Assembly: GCF_006345805.1 (NCBI RefSeq)
Contig: NW_021832998.1
Span: 1 to 64,000, forward strand
Length of the DNA: 64,000 nt
Direction of reading: 5' to 3'
DNA from: Octopus sinensis
Lineage: Eukaryota
How positions within the stretch are numbered: position 1 is the first letter of the stretch; the number at the start of each line of letters is the position of its first letter. Positions 2,190 to 30,705 of the stretch are shown here, piece after piece. The notes beneath the pieces were generated by a model, which saw nothing but the letters and a program-made list of their open reading frames with translations, did no database searches and was not told the DNA's origin. Both the position numbers and the translations under genes were made by a program.

Positions 2190-2636
2190 GCAGAACCAAA
2201 ACCCCGCCTTCCTTCTAGTGATGTGAAACAACTTGGCGAAACTTTTGCATCTTGGTTTTATAAATTGTTTAACTCAGGAACTGAATCTGGTTTGAAAGAT
2301 TAGTTTTGGCCCCGATGTTCCTTACATTTACTGTTGATATCTGAAGGGATAGATGAAGAAAGGACAGAGGGTGCTGATCTGGTCGCATGTAGACTAAAAA
2401 GATTAGTGAGCAAAGAGAACTTGCATTTCAATGCCAACATCACCGGTGGTGGTGTTACGAGTCAAGGTGAGAGTTTTGGTATTGTGTGTGTTCTGGTTCG
2501 CGGTACGGTTCACAAAGGGGATCATGTCTTGGGACTTTTCGAACAGAAGTTTGATTTGCTCAGGGATCCTTTGTCAGCAAACAACTGGAAGATAGCGCAT
2601 GTTTCACTAAAAGTTTGTGGCAAAGAGTGCCATTAG
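2190..2636 (+). pseudogene. C3orf38: C3orf38-like terminal exon (copy 0; upstream exons lie before the window), in-frame TAG at 2301-2303
   Basis: Acceptor tttctag|GCA. Translation AEPKPRLPSSDVKQLGETFASWFYKLFNS..LKD*FWP..VRGTVHKGDHVLGLFEQKFDLLRDPLSANNWKIAHVSLKV matches the C3orf38 C-terminal motifs as recalled (LGEEFCHWFF, HFW, GTVH..LGIFEQ.FGL.R.P...N.WKI). Confidence 0.85.
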
Positions 2637-2989
2637 ACAACCAAGTTTCTGAGATTCTTCTGGACATGTAGAAAAAACACCAAAAAACAAAAGCAAAAAT
2701 CATTTTGTTTATGACCAAAATTGATATTATATGCAAGGAAATTATACCATATTAAAATTATCCATTGAGACTTCTAATAAATGCTTCATTGAACATCAAA
2801 CTAAATGTTTTCTGCTTTTCACATTTTCTTCTATTTCATCATCATCTTCATCATCATCATCATCATCATTTAGGCATTTACTTTTCCATGCTTGGATGGG
2901 TGACACAGAATTTGTTGAAGCAGATCAAAAATCAATGGAAATTGCAGTTGTGATACCAGTGCTGGTGGCACGTAAAAGATCCATCCGAA

Positions 2990-3262
2990 TGTGGCCGCTG
3001 CCAGCTCCGCCTTGACTGGCCTCCGTGCCGGTGGCACGTAAAAAGCACCAACCGATCATGGCCACTGCCAGCCTCCCCTGGCACGTAAAAAGCACCCACT
3101 ACACTCACGGAGTGGTTGGCGTTAGGAAGGGCATCCAGCTGTAGAAACACTGCCAGATCAGACTGGAGCCTGGTGGGTGCAGCCTCCCAGCTTCCCGACC
3201 CCGGTCGAACCGTCCAACCCGTGTTAGCATGGAAAATGGACGTTAAACGATGATGATGATGA
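2990..3262 (+). mobile_element. Retroposon family E 3' part with internal GGTGGCACGTAAAAAGCACC repeats and (ATG)n tail (also about 6860-7215 -, 12780-12935 -, 13480-13885 +, and array duplicates)
   Basis: Recurrent 3' end GGTTGGCGTTAGGAAGGGCATCCAGCTGTAGAAAC...GGACGTTAAACGATGATGATG. Confidence 0.75.
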
Positions 3263-3561
3263 GATACCTTTCCTGTTATTCACACTCACTCACCTGTTTC
3301 CAATAGAGATAATTTTTCCTCATTTCCAGATATATTTTCATGTATGTTTTGGCATGCTTTTTACAACTGGATGTCCATGTGGCTGTCCCTCTCGACATGT
3401 AGCATAAAGTGAACTCTTTCTTTACCACAGTTCTACTCAATCAAAGGGACTTTTTCCTTGTCTTCCAAGTTACTTGGAAACTTCACCAGTGATGGTACTA
3501 TGAAAAAAAAAAAATAAAAAACAAGTATCCTGTACCTTCCGTAAAGTCGGAAAGAATATCC

Positions 3562-28155: not shown

Positions 28156-28379
28156 AAGCTATTGATGCCATCCTCTCGTTTTCTATGTCAGCGAGTGAAC
28201 TTTTGAGCCGACAGAAAATCACACGAGATTACCTGAAGAAGTATCTTTTCAGTCAAAAAGTTTCAGTGTCTGGTAGTTCAACAAAACAGGATTTAATTTC
28301 TCGAATTTTAGAATATTGGTCTGGAGAAAGGATTTCTTATCCTGCAGTCCAATCCCCACCCAGGGAGCAAACCCATTTG
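28156..28379 (+). CDS. C3orf38: C3orf38-like copy 2, exon 2
   Basis: Same splice sites and 224-nt length as 14048-14271; 6 substitutions. Confidence 0.85.
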
Positions 28380-30266
28380 GTAATTTTCTGACCTTTTCTT
28401 TTTTAAACTTTTCTCTAACTTTGGATGAAGATCAGCAATTTTCAGGAGAGGGCTAAGTCAATTACATTAACCCCAGTGCTCCATTGGTAATTATTTTATT
28501 GACCTTGTGAGGCAAAGTTAGCCTCAGTGGCTTAGCATTTTGTCTGGTACATTGACAGTTCCATCAGCTCTCTATCTTCCTTCTTCATTAAATGATTGAC
28601 TGTCAGCTACCTAATCAAGACATCCTACCTCCTAAACTCTACGAGATACTTCAATTCATCAAACTATTTATGAGTTCCCCCAGAGTTTTGCAAGCTGTCC
28701 CTGGCACTAGATCCGTTTCACCCTTGATCCATCTAAGACAGCTAAGCACATGACTTTAATGTGTTTCTTTTACATCCCATACACAACAAAACTACATAAC
28801 AGCCCCAAACTTCCAGGTGCTCCACACACAGGTGTGATATTACCTGTACTAGTGAACAGCAATACCTAGAGGAAAGTCCTGACTGTCACCAACTGGATGG
28901 TATTTACCCAGTTTTAAAATACCTTCAAAACTGCCATCTGCAAAGCAAACATCTTGCAAATTCTTTCCTCTCCTGAAATTCATTTGGTCTTTTTGACCCA
29001 GAAACAGAAGATTATCCACCATCTTTGTAGAATTCTCCTATGCTTTTAATTTCCAATGAAGATGGCACTGTAAGCAGTGCTCACATTTGTGCTGGAAACA
29101 TTTGCACTTGCTGTCACTTTTTTTTTACAGCTCTGTAATTCACACTCCTTGCAATTACTCATCGAAAACTTCCTCTTTTCAGTCAAATAGGTCAATATCA
29201 TATGTGTTCAGCATTGTCCTACCTACAATATATAACTTTCTCAACTTGACTGGGTACACTGTGTCTCATTCTCACTCTCTCTCTACATACATACATACAT
29301 ACAAACATACATGTGTACATACATACATATATAATACACACATGTGAGTCCACTGCCCTAACCACTGGGCCATTGCGCCTCCCTCCCATATATAATATAT
29401 ATTATATATATATATATATATATATATATCATCATCATCATTTTAATGTCCGTTTATATGCTAGCATGGGTTGTGGACGGGTATATATATATATATATAT
29501 AATATATATAATATATATATATATATATATAAAGGGAAAGTTTACGAAAATAAACAAAAGACGAAGGCAGGTGGAGTATAAACAAACAAATGTATTAGTA
29601 TAGCGCTCAGGAATAGAAAATGCCTTTCCTAATGCCAACCATCCAGAGGGGACTAGCAATATATATATATATATGTATAACCGTGATCACCGTGACCGAC
29701 CGGGCTATCAGATGTGCTACCCATCGCTGGTCACAATGCGCTTCGCATTGTTTTAGCTTCAAATGACGCCACCCCGCTGGCTAAGCGAGGAGGCCAACAG
29801 GAGAAAGTGTAGAGAAAGTTGCGGCGAAAGAGTACAGCAGAGATCGCCACCAACCCCTGTTGGAGCCTCGTGGAGCTTTTAGGTGTTTTCGCTCAATAAA
29901 ACTCACAACATCCGGTCTGGGAATCGAAACTGCGATCCTACAACCGCGAGTCCGCTGCCCTAACCACTGGGCCATTGCGCCTCCACACACACACACACAC
30001 ATATGTATATTATATATATATATATATATATATATATATATATATATATATATATATATATATATATATATATAATATATATATATATATATATATATAA
30101 TATATATATATATATTATATATATATATATATATATATATATAGTCTCATCCTATATACTGACTCACTCTGACTATATGCACTGTCTTATCCAGTCTATA
30201 CACCCTGTATCTTATCCTCTTCTCTATATACGCTATTTGATATTCTCTTTTTGTTTTTATTTCTAG

Positions 30267-30705
30267 GCAGAACCAAAACCCTGCCTTCCTTCTAGTGATG
30301 TGAAACAACTTGGCGAAACTTTGCATCTTGGTTTTATAATTGTTTACTCAGGAACTGAATGGTTTGAAAGATTAGTTTTGGCCCCGATGTTCCTTACATT
30401 ACTGTTGATATCTGAAGGGATAGAGAAAAGAAAGGACAGAGGGTGCTGATCTGGTCGCATGTAGACTAAAAAGATTAGTGAGCAAAGAGAACTTGCATTT
30501 CAATGCCAAAATCACCGGTGGTGGTGTTACGAGTCAAGTTGAGTTTTGGTATTGTGTGTGTTCTGGTTCGCGGTACGGTTCACAAAGGGGATCATGTCTT
30601 GGGACTTTTCGAACAGAAGTTTGATTTGCTCAGGGATCCTTCGTCAGCAAACAACTAGAAGAAGCGCATGTTTCACTAAAAGTTTGTGGCAAAGAGTGCC
30701 ATTAG
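30267..30705 (+). pseudogene. C3orf38: C3orf38-like copy 2, exon 3: shared TAG (30373-30375), several small deletions, extra TGG>TAG (30656-30658)
   Basis: Direct alignment to 16972-17418. The frameshifts may partly be consensus errors (see findings). Confidence 0.75.

What the first reader, a model, noticed from the sequence alone, without database searches (positions are those of the whole stretch)
2190..30705. Tandem C3orf38-like gene array whose copies all share an in-frame UAG in the last exon
Seen: three last exons carry TAG at codon 38 (2301, 17083, 30373). Splice sites and phases are intact, and in copies 0 and 1 the downstream 110 codons remain open and clearly C3orf38-like. Established: a stop in the terminal exon generally escapes EJC-dependent NMD, and C3orf38 is a conserved, poorly understood gene that I recall as usually single-copy. 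Inference: the array could be (a) recently amplified pseudogenes, (b) a family making 153-aa proteins that keep only the N-terminal helical half, or (c) stop-codon recoding. UAG is the preferred ADAR triplet, and UAG>UIG reads as Trp in animals with heavy A-to-I recoding such as coleoid cephalopods. Against (c): the aligned residue in the vertebrate protein, as recalled, is His (HFW), not Trp.
Basis: partly seen in the sequence, partly recalled or inferred. Interest (0 to 1): 0.78.

Follow-up and report, generated by a model that had tools for sequence, protein, structure and literature searches.

The report
One inherited stop codon, copied thrice
Three tandem octopus copies of the C3orf38 gene share a premature stop because one CAG-to-TAG mutation was copied along a young gene array, so they look like a young truncated or dying gene copy, and nothing points to stop-codon recoding.

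Summary
TAG sits at 2301, 17083 and 30373 in three C3orf38/DUF4518 last exons. Splice sites are intact, and 110 codons stay open after the TAG in copies 0 and 1. Copy 2 is frameshifted.

The window is the start of a 68.7-kb Octopus sinensis contig that begins inside the array, so only its distal units are seen. The three stops are one event. O. vulgaris has the same array: copies A and C read CAG (Gln), and only the last copy, D, reads TAG. The nonsense C>T change therefore predates the species split. In O. sinensis the TAG-bearing last-exon segment was then spread by duplication or gene conversion (0.85-1.05% divergence between units against 2.2% between species).

Too little time has passed for the open downstream frame to mean anything. 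dN/dS among array copies is at or above 1 in both halves of the gene.

Editing to Trp would not restore the ancestral residue, which is His in 36 of 37 relatives and Gln in octopus paralogs. No unusual RNA structure covers the TAG.

Best reading: a young nonsense allele, either a pseudogene or at most a 153-aa fragment lacking the NTF2-like domain. Recoding is unsupported but not excluded without RNA data.

The parts
1..14804 (+). Tandem unit 1. It is cut by the contig start and holds only intron 2 and the last exon of copy 0, plus the intergenic stretch and the start of copy 1.
   Evidence: Self-BLAST. The contig begins at window base 1.
2190..2636 (+). Copy 0 last exon. The in-frame TAG is at 2301-2303, followed by 110 open codons and the terminal TAG at 2634-2636.
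2776..2781 (+). AATAAA poly(A) signal about 140 nt after the terminal stop of copy 0. The same signal lies at 17558-17563 in copy 1.
   Evidence: Read directly.
10556..10679 (+). Copy 1 exon 1 (ATG; donor A|gtaaaag; phase-1 intron).
   Evidence: Matches P0007.
14048..14271 (+). Copy 1 exon 2.
16972..17418 (+). Copy 1 last exon. The in-frame TAG is at 17083-17085, followed by 110 open codons that encode the rest of the NTF2-like domain.
25332..25458 (+). Copy 2 exon 1. It is divergent (about 10% from copy 1), the usual donor is mutated to gataaaag, and the annotation (P0011) uses a downstream donor.
28156..28379 (+). Copy 2 exon 2. It is closest to O. vulgaris copy D (0 synonymous and 3 nonsynonymous differences).
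30267..30705 (+). Copy 2 last exon. The homologous TAG is at 30373-30375, and the exon is frameshifted by about 9 private 1-2-bp indels.
16715..16780 (+). tRNA-derived SINE-like element followed by a (CA)n(TA)n microsatellite, about 190 nt upstream of the exon-3 acceptor. Identical copies lie at 1921-1986 and 29919-29984.
33778..37230 (+). Flank downstream of the array. It is orthologous to the flank downstream of O. vulgaris copy D and of the single O. bimaculoides gene, which marks copy 2 as the last unit of the array.

Best explanation
The window holds the distal end of a tandem array of about 9-15-kb units, each carrying a three-exon C3orf38/DUF4518 gene. The encoded protein has an N-terminal helical domain, a linker and a C-terminal NTF2-like domain. 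The array is specific to the Octopus vulgaris/O. sinensis lineage. One C>T transition turned a CAG (Gln) codon into TAG in the last array member (copy D) before the two species split. That codon lies just after the first helix of the NTF2-like domain. In O. sinensis the 2-4.5-kb segment holding this last exon was later copied into the neighbouring units by unequal crossing-over or gene conversion, so all three units on this contig show the same TAG (inferred). The 110 codons after the TAG are still open simply because very few substitutions have happened since (shown). The copies show no purifying selection. They are most likely young unprocessed pseudogenes (inferred). At most they yield a 153-aa fragment with the N-terminal helical domain plus one helix, without the beta-sheet of the NTF2-like domain. 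The stop is not recoded.
For: Identity: DUF4518 at E=1.9e-36. The exons equal the RefSeq O. sinensis 'C3orf38 homolog' P0007, 153 aa. Single origin: O. vulgaris chromosome OX597825.1 carries the same array. Copies A and C read GAT CAG TTT TGG, and copy D reads GAT TAG TTT TGG with the same 110 open codons. Copy A is an intact 274-aa ORF. Position: the window flank 33778-37230 matches the flank after O. vulgaris D, so copy 2 corresponds to D, and copies 1 and 0 sit where O. vulgaris has the CAG copy C and copy B (not seen). Spread within O. sinensis: the last-exon segments differ by 0.85% and 1.05% between units. Copy 1 differs from O. vulgaris D by 2.2%, and the exon-1 segments of units 2 and 3 differ by 10%. 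No time to decay: since the species split only about 4 substitutions fell in the 330 post-TAG nucleotides across copies 0, 1 and O. vulgaris D. Only 3.3-4.5% of random substitutions there would create a stop. No constraint: NG86 omega is 1.2-1.4 over exons 1-2 and 1.3-3.8 over the post-TAG codons among array copies, against 0.15-0.45 versus O. bimaculoides. The array is young: O. bimaculoides has one unit between the same flanks, and Argonauta shows one copy with none within 10 kb on either side. Effect of truncation: in the AF2 model of the Argonauta orthologue (pLDDT 88) the site is residue 176, after helix 146-165 and before the first strand. The C-terminal domain matches NTF2 and the G3BP1 NTF2-like domain, with target-normalised TM-scores of 0.72-0.79.
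Against: The TAG allele has persisted in two species and occupies three units in O. sinensis, which could also reflect selection for the truncated form. Lineage-specific changes after the TAG in copy D are 14 nonsynonymous to 1 synonymous. D and C together give P of about 0.01-0.05 for an excess over neutrality, with three shared sites counted twice. This hints that the domain was under diversifying selection while it was translated, but it does not say whether that continued after the TAG arose. No intact O. sinensis paralogue was seen, because the contig breaks inside the array and none appears in the protein searches. No RNA or protein data could be consulted.
Confidence: 0.72

Rival explanations
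1. A functional truncated paralogue. The TAG is the real stop, and the array makes 153-aa proteins that keep the N-terminal helical domain, the linker and one helix. The transcripts are stable because a stop in the last exon escapes EJC-dependent NMD. Such a fragment could act apart from, or against, the full-length paralogues, whose NTF2-like domain it lacks.
For: Both NCBI (P0007) and the O. vulgaris annotation (P0008) call a 153-aa product. The splice sites, the start codon and the AATAAA signal are intact in copy 1. The allele is shared by two species and has spread to three units. The N-terminal domain is a separate, confidently folded unit (residues 1-109, pLDDT above 90) joined by a disordered linker.
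Against: Omega over exons 1-2 among the TAG-bearing copies and their relatives is about 1.2 (4 synonymous, 16 nonsynonymous; copy 2 versus D in exon 2: 0 and 3), so the retained half shows no purifying selection. Copy 2 has lost its normal exon-1 donor. Expression is untested.
Confidence: 0.17
2. A-to-I recoding. ADAR edits UAG to UIG, which is read as Trp, so a full-length 263-aa protein is made conditionally. This would resemble the stop-loss edits recognised in coleoid transcriptomes and the fungal PUK1-type genes.
For: UAG is the favoured ADAR triplet (established knowledge). The host is a coleoid with heavy recoding. Coleoid editome pipelines explicitly join ORFs split by UAG>UGG edits (PMC8382921). 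The downstream ORF is open in copies 0 and 1 and in O. vulgaris D.
Against: Trp is neither the ancestral nor the conserved residue. The site is His in 36 of 37 relatives within a near-invariant WGPQHFW motif, and Gln (CAG) in O. vulgaris copies A and C. The edit would therefore not be restorative in the sense of the harm-permitting model (PMC6881472). Folding z-scores are -1.33 (299 nt) and +0.63 (601 nt). None of the 25 longest inverted repeats (of 402 pairs found) covers the TAG. The best duplex energy for TAG-centred 41-mers (-23 to -27.5 kcal/mol) lies within the range for the other exon segments (-22.7 to -35.5). The open frame is expected by chance. No transcript-derived protein reading W at this site was found in three searches of a collection that includes Logan run assemblies.
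Confidence: 0.06
3. Translational read-through or reinitiation supplies the C-terminal domain.
For: Only the open downstream frame supports this.
Against: The context GAU UAG UUU UGG matches no known read-through motif such as UGA-CUAG or UAG-CARYYA (established knowledge). No stable structure follows the stop. The 110 downstream codons contain no Met for reinitiation.
Confidence: 0.02
4. Part of the multiplicity is an assembly artefact. Copies 0 and 1 would be allelic or haplotig versions stitched in tandem on a small unplaced PacBio contig, and the indels of copy 2 would be unpolished consensus errors.
For: The contig is 68.7 kb and starts inside the array. The last-exon segments of copies 0 and 1 are nearly identical. 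In copy 2, 9 of 12 private indels cluster within 500 bp over the last exon. They are almost all 1-2-bp deletions, many in short homopolymers, and lie next to a 140-bp (TA)n tract. Neutral decay would not be expected to cluster like this.
Against: Units 1 and 2 differ by 1.5-10% elsewhere and have different microsatellite lengths. O. vulgaris independently shows at least 4 units. The TAG itself is confirmed in a second species and assembly.
Confidence: 0.15

Closest known systems
C3orf38 / DUF4518 (PF15008) family of metazoan proteins
   Same: The last exon gives a Pfam match over profile positions 127-269 of 271. The same two-domain layout is seen in the Argonauta orthologue: an N-terminal helical domain, a linker and an NTF2-like domain. 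Homologues occur from cnidarians to vertebrates.
   Different: Here the gene is in a tandem array rather than single-copy. The near-invariant WGPQHFW motif has become GLKD(Q/*)FW. The window copies are interrupted by TAG at the His position.
Young unprocessed (duplicated) pseudogenes in tandem arrays undergoing concerted evolution
   Same: The copies keep their introns and splice sites. They carry one shared disabling mutation and show mosaic divergence between units (0.85% to 10%). Omega is about 1, and an intact paralogue exists in the sister species.
   Different: Loss of expression has not been shown. The nonsense allele, rather than the intact one, is what was homogenised across the visible units.
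Coleoid UAG>UGG stop-loss editing (Shoshan et al. 2021, PMC8382921)
   Same: An internal UAG separates two open segments of one homologous coding region in a coleoid.
   Different: No editing evidence exists here. The edited residue would not match the ancestral or family consensus, and no supporting RNA structure was found.
Fungal premature-stop-codon genes rescued by A-to-I editing (PUK1 in Fusarium; PMC4817773)
   Same: Both are apparent pseudogenes with an in-frame UAG and an intact downstream frame (abstract).
   Different: The enzyme system and the organism differ. In PUK1 the edit is documented and needed for function; here nothing is documented.

Membership tests
C3orf38 / DUF4518 (PF15008) | Significant match to the Pfam model | tested here: met
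   E=1.9e-36, 126 bits against a cutoff of 27. All homologues carry PF15008.
C3orf38 / DUF4518 (PF15008) | N-terminal helical domain plus C-terminal NTF2-like domain | tested here: met
   Exons 1-2 and exon 3 align along full-length relatives. The AF2 model of the Argonauta orthologue has pLDDT 88, and Foldseek matches NTF2 and G3BP1 NTF2L with target-normalised TM-scores of 0.72-0.79. The model is of the orthologue, not of the window protein.
C3orf38 / DUF4518 (PF15008) | Conserved WGPQHFW motif with near-invariant His | tested here: not met
   His in 36 of 37 sequences. Octopus reads GLKDQFW (O. vulgaris A and C) or GLKD*FW (window copies and O. vulgaris D).
C3orf38 / DUF4518 (PF15008) | Uninterrupted reading frame of about 260-300 codons | tested here: not met
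   TAG at codon 154 in copy 1. Copy 2 is also frameshifted.
Duplicated (unprocessed) pseudogene | Disabling mutation relative to an intact paralogue | tested here: met
   CAG>TAG relative to O. vulgaris copies A and C. A is an intact 274-aa ORF.
Duplicated (unprocessed) pseudogene | Neutral evolution (omega about 1) of the coding sequence | tested here: inconclusive
   Omega is 1.2-1.4 over exons 1-2 and 1.3-3.8 after the TAG, but the counts are small (2-4 synonymous changes). The intact copies A and C also give 1.3, so diversifying selection cannot be separated from relaxation.
Duplicated (unprocessed) pseudogene | Loss of expression or of protein product | not testable with these tools
   No RNA-seq or proteomic data are reachable. 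No transcript-derived homologues were found in the protein collection.
ADAR stop-loss recoding site (UAG>UIG) | A/G mismatch between genome and transcripts at the stop | not testable with these tools
   No reads are available. The Shoshan 2021 supplements held as text do not mention CC038 or C3orf38.
ADAR stop-loss recoding site (UAG>UIG) | Edited adenosine lies in a double-stranded RNA structure | tested here: not met
   z = -1.33 and +0.63. None of the 25 longest inverted repeats listed covers the site. The duplex scan shows no outlier. This rests on prediction only.
ADAR stop-loss recoding site (UAG>UIG) | Edited codon gives an acceptable or ancestral residue, with the downstream ORF under constraint | tested here: not met
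   Trp against a family His and an octopus Gln. The post-TAG omega is not below 1 among array copies, and the comparison of orthologues gives only 1 synonymous and 1 nonsynonymous change.
Programmed stop-codon read-through | Known leaky context or downstream stimulatory structure | tested here: not met
   The context is UAG-UUU-UGG. No stable local fold was found. The list of motifs comes from established knowledge.

The most novel reading that the evidence does not exclude
The TAG-bearing terminal exon was not merely tolerated but favoured. It has persisted since before the O. vulgaris/O. sinensis split and replaced the CAG version in neighbouring units. The reason would be that the array makes either an N-terminal-domain-only C3orf38 fragment with its own role, or an editing-gated (UAG>UIG, Trp) full-length isoform, within a gene family that is diversifying under positive selection (nonsynonymous excess in the NTF2-like domain).
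Probability: 0.1. Interest if true: 0.6.

Novelty: new member of a known kind. Interest (0 to 1): 0.2.

Why it matters
As it stands the finding is ordinary: a young nonsense allele copied within a lineage-specific tandem array. It shows that identical 'conserved' stops in tandem repeats count as one event, not three. Two points have modest value. First, an otherwise single-copy, deeply conserved and uncharacterised gene (C3orf38) was amplified in one octopus lineage. There it lost its most conserved motif and shows dN/dS at or above 1, which may say something about what the NTF2-like domain binds. Second, the locus offers a clean and cheap test for stop-loss editing in a coleoid, because the edited and unedited products differ by a whole domain.

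Tried and rejected
1. I tried to read the codon in O. bimaculoides as an outgroup. The site lies in an assembly gap (a run of N up to L003:16742). Both protein models there (P0002, P0009) skip it or read through intron.

2. I looked for transcript-derived proteins with W, Q or a stop at the site, using three protein searches that include Logan assemblies. None came from octopus beyond the genome annotations.

3. I looked for published editing calls. Liscovitch-Brauer 2017 is not held under the id I tried. The Shoshan 2021 supplements held as text have no CC038 or C3orf38 entry. A full-text search for C3orf38 gave only human and vertebrate association papers.

4. I tested for an ADAR-type structure by folding, by an inverted-repeat search and by a duplex scan. 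Nothing was specific to the TAG. The inverted repeats that do flank the exon (16288-16436 and 17891-18042) lie more than 600 nt away, and the downstream arm is beyond the poly(A) signal.

5. I rejected the idea that the open 110 codons are evidence of constraint. About 4 substitutions since the species split, at a stop-creating fraction of about 4%, give an expected 0.16 new stops.

6. I considered treating the nonsynonymous excess (D 14:1, C 14:2) as proof of positive selection and rejected that as too strong. P is about 0.01-0.05, the partition was chosen after seeing the data, shared sites are double-counted, and some changes are clustered (codons 15-17 and 99).

7. O. vulgaris copy B and the 19-kb stretch between L001 and L002 could not be fetched. 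The 624-aa fused gene model that spans it was never returned by a search.

8. tRNA, Rfam and ORF scans of 31-64 kb found nothing relevant.
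Full report
**What is in the window.**
The window equals the first 64 kb of contig VCDQ01002170.1 (68,675 bp) of the Octopus sinensis assembly GCA_006345805.1; window and contig coordinates coincide. Self-comparison shows tandem units of about 14.8 kb: 1-14804, 14805 to about 28912, and a third unit running to about 33.3 kb.

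Each unit carries a three-exon gene. In copy 1 the exons are 10556-10679, 14048-14271 and 16972-17418, with canonical splice sites. This copy encodes exactly the RefSeq protein 'uncharacterized protein C3orf38 homolog', 153 aa (P0007). The last exon matches Pfam DUF4518 at E=1.9e-36.

The contig begins inside intron 2 of copy 0. Only the three distal units of the array are therefore visible.

**Check of the observation.**
- TAG is present at 2301, 17083 and 30373.
- In copies 0 and 1 it is codon 38 of the last exon, and 110 codons remain open after it.
- Copy 2 is different. It has about 9 private 1-2-bp indels between 30242 and 30750 and is out of frame on both sides of the homologous TAG. 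Its normal exon-1 donor is changed, and the annotation (P0011, 177 aa) uses another donor.
- The last exons of copies 0 and 1 differ at 2 of 447 nt.

The three stops are therefore copies of one mutation, not three observations.

**Origin of the stop.**
O. vulgaris chromosome OX597825.1 (about 6.04-6.11 Mb) holds the same array with at least four units.
- Copy A is an intact 274-aa ORF.
- Copies A and C read GAT CAG TTT TGG at the site.
- Copy D, the last one, reads GAT TAG TTT TGG, followed by the same 110 open codons. It is annotated as a 153-aa protein (P0008).

The stop is thus a C>T transition in a Gln codon, and it predates the split of the two species.

Further out, the site is His in Argonauta, in Nematostella and in 36 of 37 aligned family members. 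It lies in a near-invariant WGPQHFW motif that Octopus has degraded to GLKDQFW. The O. bimaculoides codon is hidden in an assembly gap.

**How it came to be in all three units.**
The flank after window copy 2 (33778-37230) matches the flank after O. vulgaris D and after the single O. bimaculoides gene. Copy 2 is therefore the positional orthologue of D. Copies 1 and 0 sit where O. vulgaris has copy C (CAG) and copy B (not seen).

Divergence between the window's units is mosaic:

| Segment compared | Substitution divergence |
|---|---|
| Last-exon segment, unit 1 vs unit 2 | 0.85% |
| Last-exon segment, unit 2 vs unit 3 | 1.05% |
| Most other segments between units | 1.5-4.4% |
| Exon-1 segment, unit 2 vs unit 3 | 10% |
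| Copy 1 vs O. vulgaris D (between species) | 2.2% |

Exon 1 of copy 1 resembles O. vulgaris B, whereas exon 2 of copy 2 resembles D. The simplest reading is inferred, not shown. The TAG-bearing last-exon segment was spread within O. sinensis after speciation, by unequal crossing-over or gene conversion.

O. bimaculoides has one unit between the same flanks, and Argonauta has one copy with none within 10 kb on either side. The array is therefore young.

**Does the open downstream frame mean anything?**
Since the species split, only about four substitutions fell in the 330 post-TAG nucleotides across copy 0, copy 1 and O. vulgaris D. Only 3.3-4.5% of random substitutions there would create a stop. 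An open frame is what neutrality predicts.

**Selection.**
Nei-Gojobori estimates:

| Comparison | Region | Omega |
|---|---|---|
| Among array copies | Exons 1-2 | 1.2-1.4 (e.g. copy 1 vs D: 4 synonymous, 16 nonsynonymous) |
| Among array copies | Post-TAG codons | 1.3-3.8 |
| Versus O. bimaculoides | Both regions | 0.15-0.45 |

Purifying selection that acted on the single-copy ancestor is thus not visible among the array copies, in either half of the gene.

Lineage-specific changes in the NTF2-like part are 14 nonsynonymous to 1 synonymous for D and 14 to 2 for C. This is a suggestive excess over neutrality (P about 0.01-0.05, with caveats). It hints at diversifying selection before the stop arose, but it does not show translation after it.

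**What the truncation removes.**
An AlphaFold2 model of the Argonauta orthologue (pLDDT 88) shows four parts:
- a helical domain (residues 1-109);
- a disordered linker;
- a helix (146-165);
- a beta-rich domain (177-281).

Foldseek matches the C-terminal domain to NTF2 and to the G3BP1 NTF2-like domain, with target-normalised TM-scores of 0.72-0.79. The TAG corresponds to residue 176. The 153-aa product therefore keeps the N-terminal domain, the linker and one helix, and loses the whole sheet.

**Recoding hypotheses.**
Editing UAG to UIG would give Trp, which is neither the family residue (His) nor the octopus one (Gln). It would not be restorative in the sense of the harm-permitting model (PMC6881472).
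- The RNA around the TAG folds no better than shuffled controls (z = -1.33 and +0.63).
- None of the 25 longest inverted repeats listed covers the TAG.
- A duplex scan of intron 2, exon 3 and the 3' UTR gives TAG-centred 41-mers ordinary values.
- The stop context matches no known read-through motif, and no Met follows for reinitiation.

Stop-loss UAG>UGG editing is a recognised category in coleoid editome pipelines (PMC8382921). A documented fungal analogue also exists (PMC4817773). The idea is therefore legitimate, but nothing here supports it. No RNA data were reachable.

**Verdict.**
This is one inherited nonsense mutation in a young, fast-evolving tandem array, seen three times because the segment that carries it was copied. 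It is most likely a young pseudogene, or at most a truncated paralogue. Recoding is unsupported but could be settled directly with existing RNA-seq.

Noticed in passing
window 30242-30750: In copy 2, 9 of 12 private indels cluster over the last exon, next to a 140-bp (TA)n tract. Nearly all are 1-2-bp deletions, many in short homopolymers. Only 3 indels fall in the next 1.5 kb. This looks more like a poorly polished long-read patch than neutral decay.
   Followed up: partly
window 1921-1986, 16715-16780, 29919-29984: An identical 66-nt tRNA-derived SINE-like segment, followed by (CA)n(TA)n of very different lengths, sits about 190-280 nt upstream of each exon-3 acceptor. ARAGORN found no tRNA genes. 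Rfam found one tRNA-like hit at 34335-34393 on the minus strand.
   Followed up: partly
window 16288-16436 and 17891-18042: Two inverted-repeat pairs (63 and 67 nt, 86-88% complementary) bracket the last exon of copy 1. The downstream arms lie beyond the AATAAA signal at 17558, so they probably do not share a mature transcript with the TAG.
   Followed up: partly
family alignment A3; window 17074-17094: The WGPQHFW motif, near-invariant from cnidarians to mammals, is degraded in Octopus (GLKDQFW) and partly in Argonauta (SPSHFW). The octopod lineage therefore relaxed the most conserved feature of C3orf38 before the array arose.
   Followed up: partly
L002:19868 to L001:2042 (O. vulgaris OX597825.1, about 6.063-6.093 Mb): The O. 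vulgaris annotation fuses neighbouring array copies into one 624-aa DUF4518 gene model. Copy A's last exon is annotated separately as a 164-aa protein (P0001), although A has an intact three-exon 274-aa ORF.
   Followed up: no
L003:about 16300-16742 (O. bimaculoides CM046612.1): An assembly gap removes the first third of the last exon. The RefSeq model (P0002, 212 aa) skips it, and the older UniProt model (P0009, 276 aa) reads intron sequence instead.
   Followed up: yes
window 35357-35899 (-), 36185-36586 (+), 46000-46434 (-): A repeated element gives ORF fragments ending in ...TGT(Y/L)(L/F)IDPERMKGKV(D/G)LGGI, flanked by long N/D/S homopolymer-coding runs. It is probably an interspersed repeat of the octopus genome.
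   Followed up: no
window 10054-10660 vs 24827-25436: The exon-1/promoter segment is the most divergent part of the repeat unit (10% between units 2 and 3), whereas the last-exon segment is the most uniform (about 1%). The units are mosaics of different histories.
   Followed up: partly
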